Under the pieces are notes generated by a model that saw only the letters and a program-made list of their open reading frames with translations, searched no databases and had not been told where the DNA came from. From NCBI RefSeq assembly GCF_000143415.4, contig NW_003314448.1, forward strand, positions 1 through 64,000: DNA of 64,000 nucleotides. The letters run 5' to 3'. Shown piece by piece: positions 1-45,748 of this stretch (the first letter of the stretch is position 1; each line of letters opens with the position of its first letter). Made by a program: the position numbers and the translations under genes. This DNA is from Selaginella moellendorffii. Its lineage: Eukaryota; Plantae; Lycopodiophyta.

Positions 1-163
1 CCCTAAACCCTAAACCCTAAACCCTAAACCTAAACCCTAAACCCTAAACCCTAAACCCTAAAACCCTAAACCCTAAACCCCATAACCCTAAACCCTAAAC
101 CCTAAACCCTAAACCCTAAACCCTAAACCCTAAACCCTAAACCCTAAACCCTAAACCCTAAAC
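1..163. repeat. Terminal plant-type telomere (CCCTAAA)n, left chromosome end
   Basis: About 23 tandem CCCTAAA units with a few variants, starting at base 1. Confidence 0.97.
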
Positions 164-596
164 CGGTTTGCAGGCACTTTGGGAGGCGCGGAACCACTGT
201 CGCTTTGATGGGCAACAAGCGAGAATATCGGCAGTGGTGGCATCATGGTGGAGACTCACTCTCGCAGCGGTGCGTCTTCACTACACCATCCTGAAAGAGC
301 GGGCGAAACCGAGGCAGCTCGAGGAGTGGAGATCTAGGTGGCTCCCATGCTTCGGCAAATTGGGAGGTGGCGAGATTCGCTGGCAATGGCGCCCCCCAGA
401 CTCTGTTCTAAGGTCAGCTCGTGGGGGAGACTTGGACATCGACATGATTCGCTCGAGACGACCACGTCCACTTCTACTCCAGGACTAGGTCTAGCTGCGG
501 CATATGAGGATCACGTAGAGTAGCTCATGGAGAGGGCGGCACGCCCATTTTTTGTATTAGTCCCATTGGGACATGGGGAATGTACATACACGTTCA
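164..596 (+). mobile_element. 5'-truncated L1/Tx1-like LINE 3' end (ORF2 C-terminus and 3' UTR), capped by telomeric repeats
   Basis: ORF 168-488 has LWEARNHCRF (LWxxRNxxxF-type L1 C-terminal motif) and WQWRPP. It resembles the end of ORF 44087-44836 (LWMIYRERI...WNWKPP). Confidence 0.6.
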
Positions 597-668
597 GCGA
601 TCTCGCCGGATTGCAACACCACGGGGTGTCTTTGACCCTAAACGCCTAAACGCGCCTAAATCCTAAAC
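597..668 (+). repeat. PLE 3'-terminal module (hairpin plus variant telomeric tail), copy 1
   Basis: GCGATCTCGCCGGATTGCAACACCACGGGGTGTCTTTGACCCTAAACGCCTAAACGCGCCTAAA. It recurs at 10768, 23120, 23327 (partial) and 30569. Confidence 0.9.
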
Positions 669-1879
669 TCTCTGCGGTTCAAAAGCATCCGAGCGGGCCT
701 CACCAGCTTTGCTCGGCTGCAAAAGCACATCCCACGCACCAAGTAAGCTTAAGTTCTCACACTGTTTTTATTGTTCCAGAAGAATCCAGTAAATTCAAAC
801 AACAATTTACCGGAATCGGACCTCTTCGCCAATGACAGGCCAAGACAGCTCCATATACGGCTCTAGGACAGGAGAAGCCAGCCACGATGCCCCTCACTCC
901 CTGCGCACAGGTCTGGCACAGCAAATCTCCAGGCCGGGCATTTACGTTGGCCCCTGTGCGCTGCACCTCACCGCCAGGACGCCACAGAAATCCCTGCCTG
1001 GAGCTGCTAACCGCCACTAAGAGTCTGGGAGCTAGCTCGGCATCTCCACCAACAGCTTCTCTGGCGTCTAGCGCAGCCCAGCTCCTCTGACTCACGTCCG
1101 GCACAGCAAGTGCCCCACAAAGGGTTTTTGCCCCCTTTGGTCGCTGCCTCGGCACCACCAAGGGATCTCCAAAAATCCTAAGGGGACTGCTCCCTGCTGT
1201 TGAGAGCATGCGCGCTGCCCAGACATCACCACAGAGCTGCTGAGATCCACCAGAATCCGCCGTAAAAACGCTGCCCGCTCACGCTGCTGTTTTCTCCCCT
1301 TTCTCCCCTCTCGCCCATCCTCCACCGTCAGATCCCCGTGATCTAACGGCCCACAACGCTCAAACACCAAGCGCAAAAAATTCTAAGTCCCAGCACTTAG
1401 ATTTTTTGTCTCTTGCTTTTTGTCCCTTGTGGCTGTGGAGGAGGGAGCAACGGGAGAAAGCACGAGAAAGCACGTGAGCGCAGCAGCTGTTTCTGAGCTT
1501 GCCAGTCTACGGCTCAAGGTCTGCCCTGCCCTCTCCTCCTCTCTGGAGGCAGGGCCTTTTTCGTTTTTCTTGCTTGGGGCTAACAGCAGAAAAAATCGGC
1601 CCTGCCAGCAGCAGCAGCCGGCGACCCAGCCAGCGCCAGCCACAGCCGCTGCCAACGCCAGCAGCTACAGCTGCCGCCAACGCCAGCAGCTGCCGCGGCT
1701 GCCACATCTCGGCCAGCCGCCCGCGGCGGCCACACCCAACGCTTGGGCGAGCACTCGCCGCCCAACGCGCCGCGGCTTGGCCGGCCCAGCAGCGCCAAGC
1801 AGCACCACGGGCTGCTACGCACTGCTGCACGCCGCCCAGGGCCGCTCCACGCGCGCCGCGCACCACCCAGCGACGCGCG

Positions 1880-4866: not shown

Positions 4867-6710
4867 CCAGTCCGTCTAAGGCCACCCTCGACATCGCAGG
4901 ACAACGGCCAGTCTCGAAGTTCGAGAACCGAGTGGAGACTGGAGCCGTACACAACCTCTCGAGCAGGACTCTCTCAGCTGCCGAGATCCGTCTCCTCTCC
5001 CTCGGCCTGAGGTACATCCCGAACCCGGCACCGCTCAGAGCCCCACAGATCATGGAAAGCTCTGATGCTCTCTGCCGAGCCGTCCGACTCCGTCACCTCT
5101 TCAAGGACGACGACTCAGCCCTGCCGGAGTTCCGAGTACCGAACCCGATCTTCGAGCCGCCTCCAGCACCAGCGCATGTGGAACGACGCCTAGCACACTT
5201 GCGAGGCAGCCTGCTCCACAGGCTTGAAGGAGCACACAAGCCTCGCTCCTTCGCTCACGGTTGGAAGAAGCGTGCCCTCTGCTCTCTCGCGACGGACACC
5301 TCCATCGTCATCAAGCCCGCGGATAAAAACCTTGGAGCGGTGATTCTGGATCGCGATTGGTACACGAAGGAGGCTCTGCGCCAACTGAACGACCCACTCG
5401 TTTATGTGAAGGTCCCCTCCGTGCCATCCAAGGCCCTCCAGGAACGCCTCGCCGAGCTCATCACAAAGTACCGCAGCTGCTCATGGCTCGACAACTCCAC
5501 GCAGCAGTTCCTGCTGCACCAGCCCGCCGTACCCCGGCAAGCTTGCATGCTGTATTTTCTTCCGAAAATACACAAGCAGCCAATAAAGGGCCGGCCAATT
5601 GCGAGCTATATCGGCACTTTGTGGGAGCCCCTCGCGCGGTGGCTTCACCGCCAGCTCTACGACATCCTGCTGAAGCAGCCAACGTTTCTCGCTGATTCGC
5701 TCACGCTGCTACAGGACCTCCTCCACCTACAGCTCCCGCGGGACTGCTGGCTCTTCACGTTCGACGTAGAGAGCCTCTACCCAAGCATCCCCACACGAGA
5801 GGGTCTCCAACGCCTCCGCGACTTTGTGTTTGCCGAGTACGGCAACACCACACGCTCGCGATTCCTCATGGCTGCGGCTGCCCTCGTCCTGGAGCACAAC
5901 TACGTGGAGTTTGACGGTAACATCTACCAGCAGATCCGCGGCACAGCGATGGGCTCCAACTTTGCGGTGGTCTACGCTTGTCTCTTCCTCTGCTCTCTTG
6001 AAGCCGAGTACAAGCACGCCACCAACGACTGGCCCTTCTATCTACGAAGGTACATAGATGACGGAGTGGGCATTTGGACAGGTACACGAGCAGGCCTCGA
6101 ACGATGGCTCCGAGGATACGGCACGCTGTGTCCTTCGATCAAGATCACCTCGGTGATCTCGCTCGAAGAGTTGGATATCCTCGATATCCACTTCTTCAAA
6201 GGCCCTCGCTTTGAAGAGACAGGCTGCCTCGACTCGTCCACGTTCCAGAAGCCCCTCAATGCCTACCAGTACCTCCCCTGGACGTCGGTTCACCCACGGC
6301 ACCAGAAGGTGGCATTCATCCGCAGCGAGCTCCGCAGATACCTCCTCCGCGAGAGCACGGCCGATGGATTCCACACCATGCGCACGCGGTTCTACCACCA
6401 CCTCCGTGCCCGGGGATACCCGACCTCCTTCCTCCATCACTGCTTCTCCGGCATCTCCTACGACCAGCGACATCAAGCTCTCCTTGCACGTTCGCGCCGC
6501 TCTAGCGACGCCTGTCGACGGGCCCCCCTCGCCTTCAAGCTGCCTTACACACTCCACAGCGCGCAGCTAGGCTTGGGGGACATCCTAAACCCTAAACAGG
6601 TGATGGATGAAGCTCCCGCAGACACACTCCCCCGAGTGATTACGTGTTGGAGACGCTCCCCGAACCTCGGTTCGTTCCTGGTCAGGGCCAAGCTCCCTCC
6701 GCGAGCTTAG
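4449..6710 (+). CDS. PLE reverse transcriptase in the -1 frame (no endonuclease); predicted ORF1-RT fusion of ~1544 aa
   Basis: KPADKN, LPKIHK, FDVESLYPSI, GTAMGSNFA and RYIDDG motifs. The frame is stop-free from 4449 (translated by hand). No GIY-YIG domain before the stop. Confidence 0.93.
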   Translation, partial: RTAAERDYWDSSHLFRCIGFFFEGDSAPDISSPAWFPRKECWTRWPSPLRPQQLPAATPTLHDTGTGHLRSPATARTFTDQRQQGSSHTQPSTSPWTEPDPCQPQEQDPSTTTPLTLALTLTNRQSPCEGNPQDYWSPLTSPSKATLDIAGQRPVSKFENRVETGAVHNLSSRTLSAAEIRLLSLGLRYIPNPAPLRAPQIMESSDALCRAVRLRHLFKDDDSALPEFRVPNPIFEPPPAPAHVERRLAHLRGSLLHRLEGAHKPRSFAHGWKKRALCSLATDTSIVIKPADKNLGAVILDRDWYTKEALRQLNDPLVYVKVPSVPSKALQERLAELITKYRSCSWLDNSTQQFLLHQPAVPRQACMLYFLPKIHKQPIKGRPIASYIGTLWEPLARWLHRQLYDILLKQPTFLADSLTLLQDLLHLQLPRDCWLFTFDVESLYPSIPTREGLQRLRDFVFAEYGNTTRSRFLMAAAALVLEHNYVEFDGNIYQQIRGTAMGSNFAVVYACLFLCSLEAEYKHATNDWPFYLRRYIDDGVGIWTGTRAGLERWLRGYGTLCPSIKITSVISLEELDILDIHFFKGPRFEETGCLDSSTFQKPLNAYQYLPWTSVHPRHQKVAFIRSELRRYLLRESTADGFHTMRTRFYHHLRARGYPTSFLHHCFSGISYDQRHQALLARSRRSSDACRRAPLAFKLPYTLHSAQLGLGDILNPKQVMDEAPADTLPRVITCWRRSPNLGSFLVRAKLPPRA

Positions 6711-8888
6711 CCACGTCTTGTACCACACTTTGCAAGACACGGAAGCATATGTTTGCATCCCTCTCCGCATACCCTATGACTCCCAGGGTCTGGCCGATGG
6801 ACTTCAGGTATGTCCCAAGTCACTCCAGGCCACCCCCCTTTCGAGTCAACGCCAGGTCAACGCGGAGTCAACGGTCAGAACGGAATATTCCCCAATATTC
6901 CGACTGTATCCCTGTTGACCGAGTCAAAACGGCATATACCGTTGGATTCCGCTCTTCCTTCCGATCGTGAATATGTGAGTTTCAACTCTGAACTCCACAC
7001 ATGACTCGTGGAAAAGCGTGTATTCCGTTAAAACGGTGCCGCTCCCTCGACATCGGCGACACACGCCGACAGCTCGCGGGATGGCTCTCCCCGACACAAC
7101 CGCTGGACTCCGAGTATGTATGAGTGACCTCAGGCCCTCCACCACCACAGTCCACACACGGTCAACGCGGGGTCAACGGTCAACGACGGAATATTCCGAG
7201 AATATTCCCTGCAAAGTGAACCACGTTTTTTCGTCGCCGGGTACGTACAAGTGATACAAGCATTGTGGACGTAATGCATGCATCATATCATGCCGCGTTC
7301 ACAAGTTATCTCGCGTCAAAGGTACATCACCCGCCGGACGAACGCTTACTGTCTTCGGCGATCCGCCGAAGTCATTCTCCGCGACTACCACTGCTGTGGA
7401 GTAACCAACACCAGCTGTGCTACGTTCGCACCCTTGCGAGCCAACGCTGCCACGCCACTTCGCATGGCCGCCACACGGACTCGCGCCACGTGACAGAGCC
7501 AAAATATAAGTAGAGTCGGCACCGAGCTAGGGTTAAGGTAGACACTAGATGACTACACTCGACTCGTCCACGTTCCAGAAGCCCCTCAATGCCTACCAGT
7601 ACCTCCCCTGGACGTCGGTTCACCCACGGCACCAGAAGGTGGCATTCATCCGCAGCGAGCTCCGGAGATACCTCCTCCGCGAGAGCACGGCCGATGGATT
7701 CCACACCATGCGCACGCGGTTCTACCACCACCTCCGTGCCCGGGGATACCCGCCCTCCTTCCTCCATCACTGCTTCTCCGGCATCTCCTACGACCAGCGA
7801 CATCAAGCTCTCCTTGCACGTTCGCGCCGCTCTAGCGACGCCTGTCGACGGGCCCCCCTCGCCTTCAAGCTGCCTTACACACTCCACAGCGCGCAGCTAG
7901 GCTTGGGGGACATCCTAAACCCTAAACAGGTGATGGATGAAGCTCCCGCAGACACACTCCCCCGAGTGATTACGTGTTGGAGACGCTCCCCGAACCTCGG
8001 TTCGTTCCTGGTCAGGGCCAAGCTCCCTCCGCGAGCTTAGCCACGTCTTGTACCACACTTTGCAAGACACGGAAGCATATGTTTGCATCCCTCTCCGCAT
8101 ACCCTATGACTCCCAGGGTCTGGCCGATGGACTTCAGGTATGTCCCAAGTCACTCCAGGCCACCCCCCTTTCGAGTCAACGCCAGGTCAACGCGGAGTCA
8201 ACGGTCAGAACGGAATATTCCCCAATATTCCGACTGTATCCCTGTTGACCGAGTCAAAACGGCATATACCGTTGGATTCCGCTCTTCCTTCCGATCGTGA
8301 ATATGTGAGTTTCAACTCTGAACTCCACACATGACTCGTGGAAAAGCGTGTATTCCGTTAAAACGGTGCCGCTCCCTCGACATCGGCGACACACGCCGAC
8401 AGCTCGCGGGATGGCTCTCCCCGACACAACCGCTGGACTCCGAGTATGTATGAGTGACCTCAGGCCCTCCACCACCACAGTCCACACACGGTCAACGCGG
8501 GGTCAACGGTCAACGACGGAATATTCCGAGAATATTCCCTGCAAAGTGAACCACGTTTTTTCGTCGCCGGGTACGTACAAGTGATACAAGCATTGTGGAC
8601 GTAATGCATGCATCATATCATGCCGCGTTCACAAGTTATCTCGCGTCAAAGGTACATCACCCGCCGGACGAACGCTTACTGTCTTCGGCGATCCGCCGAA
8701 GTCATTCTCCGCGACTACCACTGCTGTGGAGTAACCAACACCAGCTGTGCTACGTTCGCACCCTTGCGAGCCAACGCTGCCACGCCACTTCGCATGGCCG
8801 CCACACGGACTCGCGCCACGTGACAGAGCCAAAATATAAGTAGAGTCGGCACCGAGCTAGGGTTAAGGTAGACACTAGATGACTACAC
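6228..8888 (+). repeat. 1330-bp tandem duplication (pseudo-LTR): 6228-7558 and 7558-8888
   Basis: Near-identical copies of the RT C-terminus plus 3' UTR at a constant offset of 1330, with a 1-nt junction overlap. Confidence 0.95.
8815..8840 (+). promoter_or_regulatory. Putative Pol II promoter in the PLE 3' UTR (G-box GCCACGTG plus TATAAG)
   Basis: Motifs lie ~50-75 nt upstream of the hammerhead. Also present at ~7485-7510 and ~21220-21245. Confidence 0.45.
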
Positions 8889-8929
8889 CCGGCTGATGAG
8901 TCCCAAAAAGGACGAAACCGGTCTCGGGT
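8887..8929 (+). ncRNA. Minimal type I hammerhead ribozyme
   Basis: Stem I ACCCGG/TCGGGT, CTGATGA core, stem II GTCC-CAAAAA-GGAC, GAAA, palindromic stem III ACCGGT, GTC cleavage triplet at 8921-8923. Confidence 0.92.
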
Positions 8930-9074
8930 TGTCTCTTGTCCTCTCCCTCGCTCACGAATGAATGAAAATTCATTCCTTTGCCTCCTCTACTTGCTCTCAA
9001 TCATGCCGTTTCGACAACGGCACACGGAGAATGTGGATTGCACAAAGTGGTGCCGCGATCTCGCCGGATTGCAA

Positions 9075-10767
9075 GGATTGCCCTAAGTTGTTTGAGGAGA
9101 GAGCTCGAAGGCGCTAGAGAGAGAGTGTGAGAAAGAGGGAGGGAGCGAGCGTCCAGGGCGGCACAAGCATCGCAGACCGCGGCAGCAACACACGGAGCTC
9201 GTCTCCCTCCTCTTTCTCCTCTTTTCTCTCGCTCTCTGTCGTTTTTATCGATATCTCCCAAACGGCTGGGAGAAACCTCGATTCCTTCGACGGGGGGCTT
9301 CTAGGAGTGTAGATTCTCATCCTCCTAGAAGGCCGCGGCGAGATCTGCCACGGATCTGGAGATCTCGCTGGCCCTAGGTCGCTGCTGTTTCTAGGGTTCT
9401 TCGGCGGCGGCTAGGGTTTTTCGGGGCTTAGAGATTTGGAGGAGTGGAGAGGGCAGCTAGGAACACCACGGCTGCAGCAGCTGGACGCTCTCCTCTCCTC
9501 CTCTTCTTTTTTCGCTTCTCATGGTTTCAAGTTTTTTGGGAGCTCATAACTCCTAAACGGCTTGGAATGTTTCCACAAAAATTCACAGGGGGATAGCTGG
9601 GAGGGAGCCTCACACCCTCCCAGAAGCGCAGGCAAAAATTCTTCACGGTCTCAGAGTTCTCACCTGCCCTAATTCGTGGCTAGGGTTAGGGTTCTTGGCT
9701 AGCTTTTGCCCTAACTGCGGTTAGGGCAGGACTTAGGGTGGCGGCGGGATCTTCGATCCGGCCACTCTAAGTGTCAGGGATCTTCGTTGCATGTGGTTGG
9801 CACGGCAGCAACATGGTGGAAACGCGACGGTTGCTGGTCTCGCAGCTTCGAGCGGGATTTCTCGCCTTAGGTCGGGCCATGCAAGGTGGTGACTAAGGTA
9901 CGGAGAGCGTGAAGCTGCATGTGTCGGAGGTTCTTGGCGACTTGAGTCGTGGAAACACGACCAAGTCATGGGAATTTTGTTGACTGGTGGAGGACAGTTT
10001 GGGACGACATCCCGACATAGCGAAGTGTCCGCAGTGGATGGACGTGGAGGACACTATGGGCGCATTTTTGGATCTAGTGACAGGGGAGTGCTGTCACAAA
10101 GGGGGCCAGTGGCAGATGGCCGAGTTGGTTTGCTCGCGGAGGGGATCCCACATGGTTCTTGCTTCAGGGCTAGTCCTTTGAGGAGGTTCGCGGAGGCTTG
10201 CAAGTCTTGTGATTGTCGCGATGCCGGCAACGGGGGCTCGTATATCATTGAAGGGGGCCAGCGCACTTGTCTAGTGTGGGAGGCAAGGTAGCACGCTCTA
10301 GTCTAGAGCTCGAGGAGGCTCACACCTCGCTTGTTCTACGCCTTGGAGTTTGTTCGCAATGGGCACCGACTTAGTGCTGGAAGTACACTGGGGAGGTAGG
10401 CGCTCCAAGACACAGCATCACGTCTTGGGGCGTAACAGGTGGCTTCAGCTTGTGCAGTGGAGTCACCTTGGAGGCGAGTGACCCATGAGCGACGCCGGGT
10501 CATCGTGCTCGAGTTGGACCGCTTGGCTGCGACGACGTCGAGCTAGATCGACATGGTGTTCGTCTGGCCTGACATCATTGTGACCGAGTGGAGGAGTGGC
10601 AAGGCGAAGCAGGTGGCTTCAAGCTCCGCGGTGGAGTCACCTGGGAGGCGGACGGCCCAAGAGCAGCGCCGGGCGTTCGTGCTCATAGTTTCACTAGTTT
10701 CTTCGAGAGTGCGCTCTCAATGTTGTTTTGATCCCTTTGGGATTGGGGTAATGTACATATATGTTTA
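9075..10767 (+). mobile_element. 1.7-kb non-coding insert in the PLE terminal hairpin, copy 1
   Basis: Flanked by GCGATCTCGCCGGATTGCAA at 9055-9074 and 10768-10787. Its last ~45 nt resemble the LINE 3' UTR at ~551-596. Confidence 0.7.
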
Positions 10768-10806
10768 GCGATCTCGCCGGATTGCAACACCACGGGGTGT
10801 CTTTGA

Positions 10807-12438: not shown

Positions 12439-13585
12439 TGTAAGCCACAATTTTTCCTTTCCAATTTGCCAGCTTACCTCGTCTATCCGTCCAACACTGC
12501 CTTGGCTTTTGCTAAGTTCCCTTGCCAAGGTTCTCGCCTATGGTACCAGCCCCTACTTGGTTTCAGCTACTCACTGCACGAGCAACGGAGTGTTAGCCAT
12601 CCTTCCACGGATTCCCAAATCACTCCCAATCCCCCTCCCCGGGTTAGACTGGACTTAAGGTTCGGCTACACTCCCCGCAAGCACAAGCAGCCAAGCACAC
12701 CAAGCTTCCAGGTTCCTAACATCCCTTGGTACCACAAGACTTGATCATGGGACCCTCTAAATCCCAAGTCTTGAGTGCAACACTTGCTTCGGGACGCCGG
12801 GGCGAAACACCGTGGCCTAACGGCCCGGTATGGGTACCTCTCGCTCCCCACTTCCATCCCGAAGGAAGGCCCAAGCCCCTTGGAAGGGCGAGGACCAATG
12901 AGCCGCATGGTACTCAAGTGGGGCACCACTCCACATGAGCCGGGAGCACCGCAATCGGTTTCCCTTTCGGGAGTGGGAGCTGCTCTTGAGCACTTCCTTG
13001 GATGGCCCCTCCGGCACCAGCCAAGTCCATGCTCACTCCCACCCAAGGCCCCTTAGTCCCAGTCCCAACCTCAAGTCGGTTTGGAAGCCCAACTGGAGAG
13101 TCCCTTCAAAACTGGTTCCTGGACCTCACTATCCCTACTATACTTTTGGAACCCCCTGCAGCCCCCCCCCCCTGGGGGACGCACGCTTTGGGCTTTCACC
13201 CCTTGACCCGTATTAGTATTTGGACTTAGTCTCTGGCTCGATCTCGGATCCGATTTCGGATCCGACTTCGGATTCGGTCTCGGACTCGATCGCGGACTCG
13301 ATCTCGGACCCGATCTCGGGCCCGACCTCGGACTCGACTTCGGACTCGGTCTCGGACCCGATTTCGGATCTCGGACTCCGTCTCGAACTCGGTCTCGAAC
13401 TCGGACTCGAACTCGGTCCCCGAGTCGGTCTCGGACTCGATTCCGGACTCGATCTCGAACTCGGTCCTAGAGTCGGTCTTGGACTCGATCTTTGACTTGG
13501 TCCCATCCGATGAACTCTTTGTCATTTTGGTCATGCTTTCGGGGTTCCCTTAGCCTACGACACCTCGGCGAGTTGGTTCCTTACA
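12439..13585 (-). repeat. 3' LTR of the Gypsy element, containing a TCTCGG/ACTCGG microsatellite-like block
   Basis: Copy of 18822-19968 at offset 6383. Confidence 0.95.
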
Positions 13586-21291: not shown

Positions 21292-21334
21292 ACCCGGCTG
21301 ATGAGTCCCAAAAAGGACGAAACCGGTCTCGGGT
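21292..21334 (+). ncRNA. Minimal type I hammerhead ribozyme, second copy
   Basis: Identical to 8887-8929. CTGATGA at 21298-21304, predicted cleavage after C21328. Confidence 0.92.
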
Positions 21335-21478
21335 TGTCTTTTGTCCTCTCCCTCGCTCACGAATGAATGAAAATTCATTCCCTTGCCTCCTCTACTTGCT
21401 CTCGATCATGCCGTCTCGACAACGGCACACGGAGAATGTGGATTGCACAAAGTGGTGCCGCAATCTCGCCGGATTGCA

Positions 21479-23119
21479 GCAAAAGCCCTAAGTTGTTTGA
21501 GGAGAGAGCTCGAAGGCGCTAGAGAGAGAGTGTGAGAAAGAGGGAGGGAGCGAGCGTCCAGGGCGGCACAAGCATCGCAGACCGCGGCAGCAACACATGG
21601 AGCTCGTCTCCCTCCTCTTTCTCCTCTTTTCTCTCGCTCTCTGTCGTTTTTATCGATATCTCCCAAACGGCTGGGAGAAACCTCGATTCCTTCGACAGGG
21701 GGCTTCTAGGAGTGTAGATTCTCATCCTCCTAGAAGGCCGCGGCGAGATCTGCCACGGATCTGGAGATCTCGCTGGCCCTAGGTCGCTGCTGTTTTTAGG
21801 GTTCTTCGGCGGCGGCTAGGGTTTTTCGGGGCTTAGAGATTTGGAGGAGTGGAGAGGACAGCTAGGAACACCACGGCTGCAGCAGCTGGACGCTCTCCTC
21901 TCCTCCTCTTCTTTTTTCGCTTCTCATGGTTTCAAGGTTTTTGGGAGCTCATAACTCCTGAACGGCTTGGAATTTTTCCACAAAAATTCACAGGGGGATA
22001 GCTGGGAGGGAGCCTCACACCCTCCCAGAAGCGCAGGCAAAAATTCTTCACGGTCTCAGAGTTCTCACCTGCCCTAATTCGTGGCTAGGGTTAGGGTTCT
22101 TGGCTGGCTTTTGCCCTAACTACGGTTAGGGCAGGACTTAGGGTGGCAGTGGGATCTCCGATCTGGCCACTCTAAGTGTCAGGGATCTTCGTTGCATGTG
22201 GTTGGCACGGCAGCAACATGGTGGAAACGCGACGGTTGCTGGTCTCGCAGCTTCGAGTGGGATTTCTCGCCTTAGGTCGGGCCATGCAAGGTGGTGACTG
22301 AGGTACGGAGAGCGTGAAGCTGCATGTGTCGGAAGTTCTTGGCGACTTGAGTCGTGGAAACACGACCAAGTCATGGGAACTTTGTTGACTGGTGGAGAAC
22401 AGTTCGGGACGACATCCCGACATAGCGAAGTGTCCGCGGTGGATGGACGTGGAAGACACTATGGGCGCATTTTTGGATCTAGTGACAGGGAAGTGCTGTC
22501 ACAAAGGGGGCCAGTGGCGGATGGCCGAGTTGGTTTGCTCGCGGAGGGGATCCCACATGGTTCTTGCTTCAGGGCTAGTCCTTTGAGGAGGTTCGCGGAG
22601 GCTTGCAAGTCTTGTGATTGTCGCGATGCCGGCAACGGGGGCTCGTATATCATTGAAGGGGGCCAGCGCACTTGTCTAGTGTGGGAGGCAAGGTAGCACG
22701 CTCTAGTCTAGAGCTGGAGGAGGCTCACACCTCGCTTGTTCTACGCCTTGGAGTTTGTTCGCAATGGGCACCGACTTAGTGCTGGAAGTACACTGGGGAG
22801 CTTGTGCAGTGGAGTCACCTTGGAGGCGAGTGACCCATGAGCAACGCCGGGTCATCGTGCTCAAGTTGGACCGCTTGGCTGCGACGACGTCGAGCTAGAT
22901 CGACATGGTGTTTGTCTGGCTTGTCATCATTGTGACCGAGTGGAGGAGTGGCAAGGCGAAGCAGGTGGCTTCAAGCTCCGCGGTGGAGTCACCTGGGAGG
23001 TGGACGGCCCAAGAGCAGCGCCGGGCGTTCGCGCTCATAGTTTCACTAGTTTCTTCGAGAGTGCGCTCTCAATGTTGTTTTGATCCCTTTGGGATTGGGG
23101 TAATGTACATATATGTTTA
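21479..23119 (+). mobile_element. 1.65-kb non-coding insert, copy 2
   Basis: Flanked by GCAATCTCGCCGGATTGCA at 21460-21478 and 23120-23138. Confidence 0.7.
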
Positions 23120-23158
23120 GCAATCTCGCCGGATTGCAACACCACGGGGTGTCTTTGA

Positions 23159-28780: not shown

Positions 28781-28928
28781 TCACACCACTAAGCTTGTTT
28801 ATTTCCTGACCACTAAATGAAAATTCACTCCCTCGCCTCCTCTACTTGCTCTCGATCACGCCGTTTCGACAACGGCACACGGAGAATGTGGATTGCACAA
28901 AGTGGTGCCGCGATCTCGCCGGATTGCA

Positions 28929-30568
28929 AAAAAGCCCTAAGTTGTTTGAGGAGAGAGCTCGAAGGCGCTAGAGAGAGAGTGTGAGAAAGAGGGAGGGAGC
29001 GAGCGTCCAGGGCGGCACAAGCATCGCAGACCGCGGCAGCAACACACGGAGCTCGTCTCCCTCCTCTTTCTCCTCTTTTCTCTCGCTCTCTGTCGTTTTT
29101 ATCGATATCTCCCAAACGGCTGGGAGAAACCTCGATTCCTTCGACGGGGGGCTTCTAGGAGTGTAGATTCTCATCCTCCTAGAAGGCCGCGGCGAGATCT
29201 GCCACGGATCTGGAGATCTCGCTGGCCCTAGGTCGCTGCTGTTTTTAGGGTTCTTCGGCGGCGGCTAGGGTTTTTCGGGGCTTAGAGATTTGGAGGAGTG
29301 GAGAGGACAGCTAGGAACACCACGGCTGCAGCAGCTGGACGCTCTCCTCTCCTCCTCTTCTTTTTTCGCTTCTCATGGTTTCAAGTTTTTTGGGAGCTCA
29401 TAACTCCTGAACGGCTTGGAATTTTTCCACAAAAATTCACAGGGGGATAGCTGGGAGGGAGCCTCACACCCTCCCAGAAGCGCAGGCAAAAATTCTTCAC
29501 GGTCTCAGAGTTCTCACCTGCCCTAATTCGTGGCTAGGGTTAGGGTTCTTGGCTGGCTTTTGCCCTAACTACGGTTAGGGCAGGACTTAGGGTGGCAGTG
29601 GGATCTCCGATCTGGCCACTCTAAGTGTCAGGGATCTTCGTTGCATGTGGTTGGCACGGCAGCAACATGGTGGAAACGCGACGGTTGCTGGTCTCGCAGC
29701 TTCGAGTGGGATTTCTCGCCTTAGGTCGGGCCATGCAAGGTGGTGACTGAGGTACGGAGAGCGTGAAGCTGCATGTGTCGGAAGTTCTTGGCGACTTGAG
29801 TCGTGGAAACACGACCAAGTCATGGGAACTTTGTTGACTGGTGGAGAACAGTTCGGGACGACATCCCGACATAGCGAAGTGTCCGCGGTGGATGGACGTG
29901 GAAGACACTATGGGCGCATTTTTGGATCTAGTGACAGGGAAGTGCTGTCACAAAGGGGGCCAGTGGCGGATGGCCGAGTTGGTTTGCTCGCGGAGGGGAT
30001 CCCACATGGTTCTTGCTTCAGGGCTAGTCCTTTGAGGAGGTTCGCGGAGGCTTGCAAGTCTTGTGATTGTCGCGATGCCGGCAACGGGGGCTCGTATATC
30101 ATTGAAGGGGGCCAGCGCACTTGTCTAGTGTGGGAGGCAAGGTAGCACGCTCTAGTCTAGAGCTGGAGGAGGCTCACACCTCGCTTGTTCTACGCCTTGG
30201 AGTTTGTTCGCAATGGGCACCGACTTAGTGCTGGAAGTACACTGGGGAGCTTGTGCAGTGGAGTCACCTTGGAGGCGAGTGACCCATGAGCAACGCCGGG
30301 TCATCGTGCTCAAGTTGGACCGCTTGGCTGCGACGACGTCGAGCTAGATCGACATGGTGTTCGTCTGGCTTGTCATCATTGTGACCGAGTGGAGGAGTGG
30401 CAAGGCGAAGCAGGTGGCTTCAAGCTCCGCGGTGGAGTCACCTGGGAGGTGGACGGCCCAAGAGCAGCGCCGGGCGTTCGCGCTCATAGTTTCACTAGTT
30501 TCTTCGAGAGTGCGCTCTCAATGTTGTTTTGATCCCTTTGGGATTGGGGTAATGTACATATATGTTTA
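28929..30568 (+). mobile_element. 1.65-kb non-coding insert, copy 3
   Basis: Flanked by GCGATCTCGCCGGATTGCA at 28910-28928 and 30569-30587. Near-identical to copy 2. Confidence 0.7.
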
Positions 30569-30607
30569 GCGATCTCGCCGGATTGCAGCACCGCGGGGTG
30601 TCTTTGA

Positions 30608-44086: not shown

Positions 44087-44836
44087 TCAGGCTGTTCTTC
44101 TACCACTCAAAGTCCATGGCGGCTTCCAATTCCAAGTGACACCGGAAGGTCTGACGTTCCTGAAAGTCCTCATTACCAGCCACGTGCCAAGGAACTGCTG
44201 CTGCTTTTTTGCTGACCTGTGCTTGATCCTCTTCCATCGAGACGCGAGTGAAACCAAGAGATCCAACCAAAAGCTGACAGCGGCTCTGATGTCGTTCGGC
44301 TGAGTCCTGCAGTGATATAAGACGTCAATTCTTTCTCTGTAGATCATCCATAGAGTCAAGATCCGAATGACGTCCCAGAGTTCTGTGTTCAGGTTGGTGT
44401 TTGCAGCCACAAGCGGAAGATGTTGTTGCTGCCAAGTTCGATGACGAAGACGGATGACAAAAGCATCTGCGGGCGGAAAGCTATGCTTGGTGCCGTACTT
44501 GATCACTTCCCACGTAATATCAGTTGCACCCGGAACTACCAGAGGCTCAATCTCAAGAATGGGTGTACCGTTGTCGTGTACCCGCAGGAAGTCTCCACCG
44601 TTCATGCGATCCAAGAGTCCCAGGCTGGCCAAACTCCATAGATCAAGCCAGGCATCTGTTCTCCCAGAGCTTTGCCGTTGTGAACAAACAAACGATTGAA
44701 GAAGATCGGCTGGCGTGCAGGTCAATCTGGGGTTGTAACCTAACAAAGTCCTAATCAGACTAGGTTTGATGTGATGGTGAGGAAATCCTTTTTGTTGGTG
44801 TAGAGGCAAAATATTTGATGTAGCTTTTAGAGGCAA
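44087..44836 (-). pseudogene. L1-like LINE ORF2 C-terminal remnant
   Basis: LWMIYRERI and WNWKPPW. Similar to ORF 168-488. Confidence 0.55.
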
Positions 44837-45748
44837 TTTTGTAGATGCATATTATTTGTGGCAAGCTTGAGGCGAATTTGTAGCAAATTCATGAATTTTA
44901 GCCTTACAATTTGCATTGCAGCATCTGCTGGGGGATTATCCGAAACAGCAACCGAAGCAGCTCTTCTGAGCCATTCGCGTACCCCTGCAAGCAGGAAGAA
45001 CATTCCAGCCTCTTCCTCTGTCTTGGTCAAGTCAATTTCTTCGTCATCGGTGGCAGAAACAGTAGCAAATGCGCTTCAAGCTGAGGTTTCTTAGCCTCAG
45101 GCCCGGCTGTATCTCTGGATCAGCAATCTCCGCGACCGGCTGGATCTCAGTATCAGCCATCTCCAAAGCAGCAGAATCAGCAGAGAAAGCAAAAGAAGCA
45201 GAATCAAAATTCAAAAATTGATTATAATGGGCATAATCGGCTTAACTCCCTTAACCTGACCTGTGTTCTTTCATTTGAGTGACCAGTCTGCGTTTAGTTT
45301 AAATGTTCGGTTTATGATTTTTGATTTGACACGTGTCATTCATCCAATTGCCAAAGTATGTGAGCGAGTGAAACGTGTAGAGCTTTGGAATGATGAAGAA
45401 GAAACGAGTATGCTGCCCTGGCTGTATAATGGTTTTTAAACGGAATAATGTTCGCTTCAGCCTGACTCTAATTCTTAATCCTTAACTGAATCTCGCTATG
45501 AATATCCTTTGCTCAGCGGGAGTTTCTTCACAACCTAACGGGCTGGCTAATCTGCCTCTGGAGATGGAAAGCAACAGCCTTCTTGGATCTCAGCTTCTGG
45601 AGCAAGTCCTGGATATTCTGGTATATTTTTAGAATGTTACACTTTGATGTATATCGTAAGATCGATCTATGATCTTGCAGTTCAAAGGTGAATATTAAGG
45701 TACATACTAGAGGACATACTCTTTTAACAGCTTCTTGTTACATAGCTC

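What the first reader, a model, noticed from the sequence alone, without database searches (positions are those of the whole stretch)
164..620. L1-like LINE 3' end joined at exactly the same target nucleotide: the likely autonomous partner
Seen: a LINE-like ORF2 C-terminus and UTR end ...TCCCATTGGGACATGGGGAATGTACATACACGTTCA|GCGATCTCGCCGG. The non-coding insert ends ...TCCCTTTGGGATTGGGGTAATGTACATATATGTTTA|GCGATCTCGCCGG. The 3' ends are homologous and the junction is the same. Established: LINE/non-autonomous pairs share 3' ends, and Tx1-type L1 elements target specific multicopy sequences. Inference: a three-tier telomeric system of telomerase, PLE, and a PLE-targeting LINE with its satellite. 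The outermost unit is a 5'-truncated LINE plus PLE end added at the tip.
Basis: partly seen in the sequence, partly recalled or inferred. Interest (0 to 1): 0.82.

Follow-up and report, generated by a model that had tools for sequence, protein, structure and literature searches.

The report
LINE tail riding a telomeric Penelope element
At a chromosome tip of the spikemoss Selaginella moellendorffii sits the broken-off end of a LINE jumping gene that lands at one exact nucleotide in the tail of a telomere-extending Penelope-like element. It shares its last ~47 bases with a non-coding hitch-hiker that lands at the same spot. I found no paper describing this nested parasitism, although this scan has met it before on other pieces of the genome.

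Summary
Window 164-596 holds 107 open codons plus a 108-nt 3' UTR and ends ...GTTCA|GCGATCTCGCCGG. The 1.64-1.69 kb non-coding insert ends three times at the same nucleotide and shares only its last ~47 nt with the fragment (35/47), including a hairpin kept by one compensatory change.

The window is GL377752.1:1-64000 of Selaginella moellendorffii.

Evidence that the fragment is a LINE:
- The ORF is under purifying selection against a 54%-identical relative found in GL377659.1.
- Reciprocal profile searches link it only to C-terminal tails of L1-type ORF2s (APE+RT+zf-RVT) of the same genome.
- Public contigs continue at least 1.5 kb upstream, in frame as far as shown.

Evidence for repeated targeting:
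- A second LINE copy (GL377664.1) abuts a diverged tail.
- The insert sits in two different PLE families.
- Empty sites exist.

The tip copy has no upstream target or duplication and abuts telomere repeats. It was probably added passively as a 5'-truncated LINE-plus-PLE-tail cDNA.

Not shown here: a full-length copy, and hence APE and RT.

This scan had already noted the same system on other pieces of this genome. I found no publication of it.

The parts
1..163 (+). Terminal telomere tract (CCCTAAA)n, C-strand reading inward from the chromosome end
   Evidence: Read directly; repeat family D3.
164..168 (+). Junction bases CGGTT between the telomere repeats and the LINE-A sequence
   Evidence: Contigs of three public runs match from 169 onward and carry different, non-telomeric sequence before it.
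165..488 (+). Last 107 codons plus stop of the LINE-A ORF2 (5'-truncated). Motifs LWEARNxxxF and WQWRPP.
   Evidence: Listed as ORF 168-488. 54% aa identity to LINE-B, with codon-position differences 0.36/0.30/0.65. BLASTP E 4e-5 to P0125 residues 610-686, downstream of its zf-RVT. hhalign E 2e-4. Reciprocal local HMM searches. The frame continues upstream in other copies.
489..596 (+). LINE-A 3' UTR, with no poly(A). The last ~47 nt (550-596) form the tail shared with the non-coding element and LINE-B.
   Evidence: The upstream UTR does not align with LINE-B, while the last 48 nt are 85% identical.
560..572 (+). Hairpin GUCCC-AUU-GGGAC in the shared 3' tail. The non-coding element has AUCCC-UUU-GGGAU at 10731-10743.
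   Evidence: Present in the minimum-free-energy folds of both tails. The stem is kept with a G-C to A-U double change and three different loops (AUU, UUU, UAA).
597..672 (+). 3' remainder of the PLE tail: target GCGATCTCGCCGGATTGCA(A), a small hairpin, and variant telomere repeats CCCTAAACGCCTAAACGCGCCTAAA
   Evidence: 94-97% identical to tails in the window and in L002.
9055..9074 (+). Left target-site duplication of non-coding copy 1
9075..10767 (+). Non-coding partner element, copy 1 (1693 nt), in a PLE family 1 tail
   Evidence: No Pfam, tRNA or Rfam match.
10768..10787 (+). Right target-site duplication of copy 1, followed by the rest of the PLE tail
21460..21478 (+). Left duplication of copy 2 (GCAATC variant)
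21479..23119 (+). Non-coding partner element, copy 2
23120..23138 (+). Right duplication of copy 2 (GCAATC variant again)
28910..28928 (+). Left duplication of copy 3
28929..30568 (+). Non-coding partner element, copy 3, in a PLE family 2 tail
   Evidence: 99.8% identical to copy 2. The host shares only the last 94 nt upstream of the target with the hosts of copies 1 and 2.
30569..30587 (+). Right duplication of copy 3
8887..8929 (+). Type I hammerhead ribozyme of the host PLE, 126 nt upstream of the target (second copy at 21292-21334)
   Evidence: Rfam RF00163, 40.5 bits against a gathering score of 34.

Best explanation
Window 164-596 is the last 433 nt (107 codons of ORF2 plus a 108-nt poly(A)-less 3' UTR) of an L1-type LINE, here called LINE-A.

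LINE-A integrates by target-primed reverse transcription at one nucleotide of the 3' tail of the endonuclease-less, telomere-attached Penelope-like elements (PLEs) of Selaginella moellendorffii.

Inferred steps of integration:
- Its endonuclease nicks the bottom strand between ...GTGGTGCC and GCGATCTCG...
- The top strand is cut 19-20 bp downstream, giving the 19-20 bp duplication seen around the partner.

The 1.64-1.69 kb non-coding element is its non-autonomous partner. It shares only the last ~47 nt: a 5-bp hairpin with a 3-nt loop, followed by a GGGG-AATGTACATA box. This is what is expected if the LINE-A ORF2 protein picks its template RNA through this tail (stringent recognition).

The tip copy itself did not integrate where it lies. 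It has no upstream half of the target and no duplication, and it abuts telomere repeats. It was most likely laid down as a 5'-truncated cDNA of a chimeric RNA (LINE-A 3' part plus PLE tail). That cDNA would have been primed on the G-overhang through the tail's telomere-complementary repeats, presumably by the PLE RT, and then capped by telomerase.

Shown:
- the anatomy, the junctions and the empty sites;
- independent insertions;
- selection on the ORF and on the tail;
- homology of the ORF to L1-type ORF2 tails;
- the existence of longer copies.

Inferred:
- APE and RT in the full element;
- which RT made the tip unit;
- that the partner uses LINE-A's proteins.
For: Identity of the DNA: L001 from GL377752.1 matches window 16696-38438 at 100% with identical record coordinates. 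PLE RT paralogues are named as S. moellendorffii proteins.

Junctions and tail.

Empty targets...AAAGTGGTGCC|GC(G/A)ATCTCGCCGG is present in four public runs and three times in L002.

Independent insertions of LINE-A: the window and L002 copies differ at 1 of 235 nt, but the adjoining tails differ at 6 of 72 nt (Fisher p 8e-4).

Independent insertions of the partner:
- Copies 2 and 3 are 99.8% alike but sit in PLE families that share only 94 nt upstream of the site.
- Copy 2 carries the GCAATC variant in both duplications, and that variant also exists in empty sites.
- The 5' junctions differ between copies.

Coding and LINE nature:
- LINE-B (L005:1717-2190, minus strand) is 54-56% identical in protein, with third codon positions near saturation (0.65) against 0.36 and 0.30 at positions 1 and 2.
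- LINE-B has a 16-bp duplication.
- The LINE-A/B profile, searched over 3286 six-frame ORFs, next hits only L1-type ORF2 tails (E 5.6e-6 to 0.05; noise starts at 0.55). The reverse search hits LINE-A at 8.5e-4.
- BLASTP gives E 4e-5 and hhalign E 2e-4.
- Those ORF2s carry APE, RVT_1 and zf-RVT.
- Contigs of runs X1, X3 and X15 continue upstream of 169; the 30 bases shown are in frame. X3 has 1545 nt more.

Constraint on the tail: the LINE-A and LINE-B UTRs align only in the last 48 nt (85%). The hairpin stem is kept with three different loops and one compensatory pair.

Passive addition:
- Both LINE-A fragments are truncated at different points (169 and 362) and abut (CCCTAAA)n.
- The same arrays hold tail-only units of 40-100 nt between telomere tracts.
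Against: - No full-length LINE-A was recovered, so APE and RT are not seen.
- Protein homology to L1 tails is weak (21-25% identity; hhalign probability 35-46%).
- phmmer against 1.84 billion representatives gave only two spurious repeat-protein hits. Pfam and the Atlas gave nothing firm.
- Only one compensatory pair supports the hairpin, and its fold z-scores are unremarkable.
- The 5' junction of a LINE-A insertion was never observed, so its own duplication is unknown.
- The window and L002 fragments might stem from one insertion, with later gene conversion of the tails.
- One X3 contig leaves the element after 594 into unrelated sequence, so targeting is not absolute.
- Erosion followed by telomerase healing would give the same tip structure.
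Confidence: 0.7

Rival explanations
1. Same LINE and same targeting, but the tip structure arose by loss rather than addition. A PLE carrying a full LINE-A insertion was the terminal unit. The end eroded or broke inside the LINE, and telomerase healed it at 164-168.
For: The end product is identical. L002:12859-14208 shows an unrelated L1-type LINE that is also cut off directly against telomere repeats without a PLE tail. This looks like healing of a break.
Against: It would have to happen twice at LINE-bearing termini (window and L002). The same arrays contain several tail-only units of 40-100 nt separated by telomere tracts. Abortive reverse transcription explains these more easily than repeated erosion that stops just inside the tail.
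Confidence: 0.25
2. The fragment comes from a dead or non-autonomous element that merely retains an old ORF2 tail. The enzyme that moves both it and the 1.7 kb element is encoded by another LINE that is not seen here.
For: No APE or RT was seen for LINE-A, and only 3' fragments are in hand. The partner's tail differs from LINE-A's at 12 of 47 positions.
Against: The LINE-A copies are 99.6% identical, so they are young. The ORF shows purifying selection against LINE-B. Contigs extend at least 1545 nt upstream. Earlier notes of this scan report full-length copies with LINE domains elsewhere in the genome; these are leads that were not checked here.
Confidence: 0.1
3. The common junction and tail are not due to targeting. 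One ancestral insertion was copied along with its PLE host, and the bodies were later exchanged by recombination. Alternatively, the tail resemblance is chance.
For: PLE units are copied as wholes onto chromosome ends, so inserts can spread passively. The hosts of copies 1 and 2 are 96-97% alike, close to the inserts' 97.9%.
Against: Copy 3 lies in a different PLE family. The variant duplication is matched on both sides of copy 2. LINE identity is far higher than the identity of the adjoining tails. The tail match has P about 4e-10. The same tail is conserved in LINE-B at a non-PLE site that has its own duplication.
Confidence: 0.04

Closest known systems
Tx1L in Tx1D of Xenopus, and other Tx1-group site-specific L1-clade LINEs (own knowledge; group named in PMC4494074 and PMC4640811)
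   Same: An APE-type LINE that inserts at one sequence inside another multicopy mobile element or repeat, with precise 3' junctions and target duplications.
   Different: The target here is the tail of a telomere-attached endonuclease-less Penelope-like retroelement in a land plant. Membership in the Tx1 group could not be tested because no RT was recovered.
Stringent plant L1 lineage with SINE partners: maize LINE1-1_ZM with ZmSINE2 and ZmSINE3 (PMC3472496)
   Same: A plant L1-clade LINE and a non-autonomous element share a conserved, structured 3' end instead of relying on poly(A).
   Different: The partner here is 1.7 kb long and has no tRNA, 5S or 7SL head, so it is not a SINE in the strict sense. 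Both LINE and partner are site-specific.
Athena/Coprina endonuclease-less PLEs at telomeres, with hammerhead ribozymes (PMC8557442, PMC4209133)
   Same: The host elements and the way the tip unit seems to have been added: a tail with reverse-complement telomere repeats priming on the G-overhang, 5'-truncated units, and a hammerhead upstream.
   Different: Here the added unit carries foreign (LINE) sequence. None of the papers searched mentions a dedicated LINE parasite of the tail.
R1/R2 rDNA-specific LINEs, and the Selaginella L1-type LINE abutting antisense 28S rDNA in L005
   Same: Repeated use of one nucleotide of a multicopy target, with no poly(A). The Selaginella rDNA element has the ORF2 tail to which LINE-A is weakly homologous.
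   Different: A different target (PLE tail). LINE-A and LINE-B form their own family with a distinct 3' tail.
SART1/TRAS1 of Bombyx (PMC7265360, PMC2868851)
   Same: Site-specific LINEs living in the telomere region.
   Different: Those elements cut the telomeric repeat itself. LINE-A cuts a unique sequence inside another retroelement.

Membership tests
L1-clade (plant L1-type) LINE | N-terminal apurinic/apyrimidinic-type endonuclease (Exo_endo_phos) in ORF2 | not testable with these tools
   Only 3' fragments of LINE-A are held (window 164-596, L002:8727-8961). The longer contigs seen cannot be fetched.
L1-clade (plant L1-type) LINE | L1-type reverse transcriptase domain, followed by a zf-RVT or Cys-rich domain | not testable with these tools
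   The fragment starts downstream of where zf-RVT lies in relatives (P0125: zf-RVT at 468-536, alignment at 610-686).
L1-clade (plant L1-type) LINE | ORF2 C-terminal tail homologous to that of L1-type elements | tested here: met
   BLASTP E 4e-5. hhalign E 2e-4, probability 46%. Reciprocal HMM searches over 3286 ORFs pick only L1-type tails. Those ORF2s carry APE+RVT_1+zf-RVT. The support is weak but consistent.
L1-clade (plant L1-type) LINE | Target-site duplication and frequent 5' truncation (TPRT hallmarks) | tested here: met
   19-20 bp duplications around the partner. 16-bp duplication around the 5'-truncated LINE-B. The 5' junction of LINE-A itself was not observed.
L1-clade (plant L1-type) LINE | 3' poly(A) tail (relaxed L1s) | tested here: not met
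   LINE-A ends ...ACACGTTCA, LINE-B ...ACACGTTGCA and the partner ...ATATGTTTA, each directly against the target. This fits stringent or site-specific lineages.
Site-specific LINE (Tx1-like behaviour) | Independent insertions at the same nucleotide of a multicopy target, with empty sites present | tested here: met
   Two LINE-A junctions lie next to diverged tails (p 8e-4). The partner sits in two PLE families. Empty sites are seen. Exceptions: LINE-B in a microsatellite, and one X3 contig that diverges after 594.
Site-specific LINE (Tx1-like behaviour) | RT phylogeny placing it in the Tx1 group | not testable with these tools
   No RT sequence of LINE-A is available.
Stringent LINE / non-autonomous partner pair | Shared 3'-terminal sequence confined to the tail | tested here: met
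   35/47 matches counted back from the junction, with nothing shared elsewhere.
Stringent LINE / non-autonomous partner pair | Conserved RNA structure in the shared tail | tested here: inconclusive
   A 5-bp hairpin is present in all three tails, with loops AUU, UUU and UAA and one G-C to A-U compensatory change. There is only one covarying pair, and fold z-scores are -0.4 to -1.7.
Stringent LINE / non-autonomous partner pair | Partner is a SINE with a pol III head (tRNA, 5S or 7SL) | tested here: not met
   No tRNA. No Rfam family other than the host's hammerhead. The element is 1.64-1.69 kb long with no Pfam hit. It is a long non-autonomous element, not a classical SINE.
EN-minus PLE terminal addition (Athena/Coprina mode) | Unit ends in a tail with reverse-complement telomere repeats, its 5' end is variable and capped by telomere repeats, and it is sense-oriented on the C-strand | tested here: met
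   Window 164-672 and L002:8727-9033. The host PLE has an RT without an endonuclease domain (PF28514, PF26215, RVT_1) and a hammerhead.

The most novel reading that the evidence does not exclude
A land-plant telomere hosts a three-level retroelement hierarchy. An L1-type LINE uses the tail of the telomere-extending Penelope-like element both as its landing site and as a vehicle. Transcripts that run from the LINE into the PLE tail are copied onto chromosome ends by the PLE reverse transcriptase. In this way LINE sequence itself becomes part of the chromosome cap and spreads without its own endonuclease step.
Probability: 0.35. Interest if true: 0.75.

Novelty: new variant of a known kind. Interest (0 to 1): 0.62.

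Why it matters
Site-specific LINEs are known mainly from animals (R1, R2, Tx1, SART/TRAS). Plant L1s are usually treated as poly(A)-dependent and unspecific.

What this system offers:
- A lycophyte L1-type lineage with a precise target, a structured 3' tail and a dedicated non-autonomous partner. This supports the idea that stringent template recognition is ancestral in green-plant L1s (PMC3472496).
- A natural endonuclease with a long, defined recognition site.
- A parasite-on-parasite relationship at telomeres. Telomerase, an endonuclease-less PLE and an endonuclease-bearing LINE all act on the same few hundred bases, so competition and hitch-hiking between reverse transcriptases can be tested directly.

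Tried and rejected
- phmmer of the 106-aa ORF against 1.84 billion representatives gave only two repeat-protein artefacts.
- Pfam gave nothing for the ORF.
- The ESM Atlas gave only sub-threshold leads: zf-RVT clusters at 0.79-0.80.
- The exact ORF is not in the protein collection.
- I tried to reach a full-length LINE-A through annotated PLE RT paralogues and through L1-type gene models. This gave a second truncated LINE-A and the relative LINE-B, but no full copy.
- An exact-pattern scan of metagenome contigs for the LINE tail was blank.
- A look-up of earlier findings by sequence was blank.
- The 254-aa frame at 44090-44851(-) was tested as a possible LINE in the window. It has a weak L1-tail match but no RT upstream; a UGT fragment and a gypsy element lie there instead. 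It is an unrelated remnant.
- Loose-end sequences from the read lay-out were not found in any held locus.
- A structure prediction of the tail was considered and dropped. The alignment holds only about three distinct families, so a model would be unreliable.
- Gladyshev & Arkhipova 2007 could not be read because it is not held.

Full report
WHERE WE ARE

The window starts with 163 nt of (CCCTAAA)n, so it begins at a chromosome end.

A locus fetched through an annotated PLE reverse transcriptase (GL377752.1:16696-38438, assembly GCA_000143415.2) equals window 16696-38438 at 100%. The window is therefore the first 64 kb of that Selaginella moellendorffii scaffold. The paralogues are named S. moellendorffii proteins.

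Behind the telomere lies a chain of sense-oriented Penelope-like elements. They have an RT without an endonuclease domain, type I hammerheads at 8887-8929 and 21292-21334, and tails ending in variant telomere repeats. This element class, its telomeric habit and its hammerheads are published for this species (PMC8557442, PMC4209133).

THE OBSERVATION

It holds. GCGATCTCGCCGG occurs seven times, against 0.05 expected:
- once at 597, directly after ...TGTACATACACGTTCA;
- as three pairs that flank a 1.64-1.69 kb insert, which always ends ...TGTACATATATGTTTA.

The pairs are 19-20 bp target-site duplications, GC(G/A)ATCTCGCCGGATTGCA(A).

Counting back from the junction, 35 of 47 bases agree between 550-596 and the insert's end (P about 4e-10). 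Nothing else is shared.

IS 164-596 A LINE 3' END?

Direct database evidence is thin:
- no Pfam hit;
- only two artefacts in a phmmer search of 1.84 billion representatives;
- sub-threshold Atlas leads to zf-RVT clusters.

Four other lines of evidence support it.

(i) Longer copies exist. Contigs of three public runs cover 169-626 and continue leftwards with non-telomeric sequence. One continues for 1545 nt. The 30 bases shown keep the frame open (...RWSIWRATG-LQALWEARN).

(ii) A relative turned up by chance in GL377659.1: LINE-B, at L005:1717-2190 on the minus strand. It is 54-56% identical over the last 107 codons. Differences per codon position are 0.36, 0.30 and 0.65, the signature of purifying selection on a real protein. 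It is 5'-truncated and flanked by a 16-bp duplication, TCGAACTCGAACTCGG. That is a TPRT hallmark.

(iii) The protein aligns colinearly with the extreme C-terminal tail of S. moellendorffii L1-type ORF2s, about 75 residues after their zf-RVT domain. The anchor motifs are W-x-A-R-x-x-x-F and W-x-W-[KR]-P-P.
- BLASTP gives E 4e-5 and hhalign E 2e-4.
- In a controlled local test over 3286 six-frame ORFs from 244 kb, a LINE-A/B profile finds only such tails after itself (E 5.6e-6 to 0.05, noise from 0.55).
- The reverse profile finds LINE-A at 8.5e-4.

(iv) One of those relatives is a complete 1542-aa ORF2 with Exo_endo_phos, RVT_1 and zf-RVT.

I therefore accept 'L1-type LINE 3' end'. APE and RT of LINE-A itself were never seen.

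IS THE SITE REALLY TARGETED?

Empty sites (...AAAGTGGTGCC|GCGATC or GCAATC) occur in four runs and three times in L002.

A second LINE-A fragment lies in GL377664.1 (L002:8727-8961). It differs from the window copy at 1 of 235 nt, while the adjoining PLE tails differ at 6 of 72 nt (Fisher p 8e-4). Young LINE copies therefore sit in older, diverged tails at the same nucleotide.

For the non-coding element:
- Copies 2 and 3 are 99.8% alike, but their hosts share only the last 94 nt before the site, so they belong to two PLE families.
- Copy 2 has the GCAATC variant in both duplications.
- The 5' junctions differ (AGGATTGCCC, GCAAAAGCCC, AAAAAGCCC).

Targeting is not absolute. LINE-B sits in a (CGAACT/CGGACT)n microsatellite, and one X3 contig leaves the element after 594. 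The PLE site and the LINE-B site share C^NCGAWCTCG at the nick (7 of the first 9 bases), which suggests related endonuclease specificities.

THE SHARED TAIL

The LINE-A and LINE-B 3' UTRs cannot be aligned except for the last 48 nt, which are 85% identical.

All three tails contain a 5-bp hairpin: GUCCC-AUU-GGGAC, GUCCC-UAA-GGGAC and AUCCC-UUU-GGGAU. The loops differ and one G-C to A-U compensatory change keeps the stem. AAUGUACAUA follows in all three.

This is the pattern of stringent LINE/non-autonomous pairs described for one maize L1 lineage (PMC3472496).

The partner has no tRNA or other Rfam head and no Pfam match. It is a long non-autonomous element rather than a SINE.

HOW THE TIP UNIT AROSE

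Neither LINE-A fragment has the upstream half of the target or a duplication on its 5' side. Both abut (CCCTAAA)n, at different truncation points (169 and 362).

The same arrays contain tail-only units of 40-100 nt between telomere tracts.

The simplest reading is that chimeric RNAs (LINE-A 3' part plus PLE tail) were copied onto the G-overhang in the PLE manner. Reverse transcription stopped early and telomerase then capped the end. Erosion into a LINE-bearing terminal PLE followed by healing gives the same structure, and I rate it at about one in four.

COMPARISON AND NOVELTY

The system works like Tx1L in Tx1D, R1/R2 or SART/TRAS: site-specific, APE-type and without poly(A). It also works like stringent LINE/SINE pairs.

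Membership of the L1 clade rests only on the tail homology. Tx1-group membership is untested.

Four full-text searches found no description of a LINE targeting a PLE tail or of site-specific L1s in Selaginella. The 2007 paper on telomeric PLEs is not held.

Earlier notes of this scan describe the same LINE and passenger on other pieces of this genome, and the insert in this window. I used them as leads only. Their claim of full-length copies with LINE domains was not checked here.

VERDICT

The feature is real and the interpretation largely right. It is a new variant of a known kind. The 433-nt fragment is informative mainly because it ties the non-coding insert to a coding LINE and shows LINE sequence being carried to the very tip.

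Noticed in passing
L005:1717-2190 (minus strand), GL377659.1: LINE-B is a 5'-truncated relative of LINE-A (54-56% aa identity, same 3' tail hairpin). It is inserted with a 16-bp duplication at the edge of a (CGAACT/CGGACT)n hexamer microsatellite, and its nick-site core resembles the PLE target.
   Followed up: partly
L005:5244-9869 and 9870-10270: A complete 1542-aa L1-type ORF2 (APE, RVT_1, zf-RVT). Its short poly(A)-less 3' UTR abuts an antisense 28S rDNA fragment, which agrees with earlier notes of rDNA-specific LINEs in this genome.
   Followed up: partly
L002:12810-14208, end of GL377664.1: An unrelated L1-type LINE (P0125 family) is cut off inside its RT (FADD motif) directly against an internal telomere tract, with no PLE tail. 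It looks like a healed break or another terminal addition.
   Followed up: no
window 160-168; L002:8675-8683, 8720-8727, 9040-9048, 12837-12845: Many 5' borders of terminal units read CCCTAAACCGG. This may reflect a preferred register of telomerase restart or added bases, and is unexplained.
   Followed up: no
window 6228-8887: A 1330-bp tandem duplication (99-100% identical) in the 3' region of the first PLE, upstream of the hammerhead.
   Followed up: no
window 44090-44851 (minus strand) and 51543-51800 (minus strand): Two open frames give weak matches to the L1-type ORF2 tail profile (E 2.5e-5 and 1.1e-3 in the local search). No RT lies upstream; a UDP-glycosyltransferase fragment and gypsy RT/RNase H pieces lie nearby.
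   Followed up: partly
window 577-596 versus 10748-10767: All three differences in the last 20 nt between LINE-A and the non-coding element are C to T in the latter (ACACGTTCA against ATATGTTTA). This may be methylation-driven decay or tolerated variation in the tail.
   Followed up: no
window 594 and 613 (contigs of runs X3 and X1): One contig leaves the LINE tail after 594 into TATCAATCAAAAG..., a possible off-target copy. Another leaves the target after 613 into TCTTCGACGC..., a possible 5' end of a stacked insertion. Neither sequence is present in any held locus.
   Followed up: partly
window 169-393 (runs X15, X16): Contigs of two runs guessed to be RNA cover parts of the LINE-A coding region. 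This hints that LINE-A is transcribed, but the library type is not on record.
   Followed up: no
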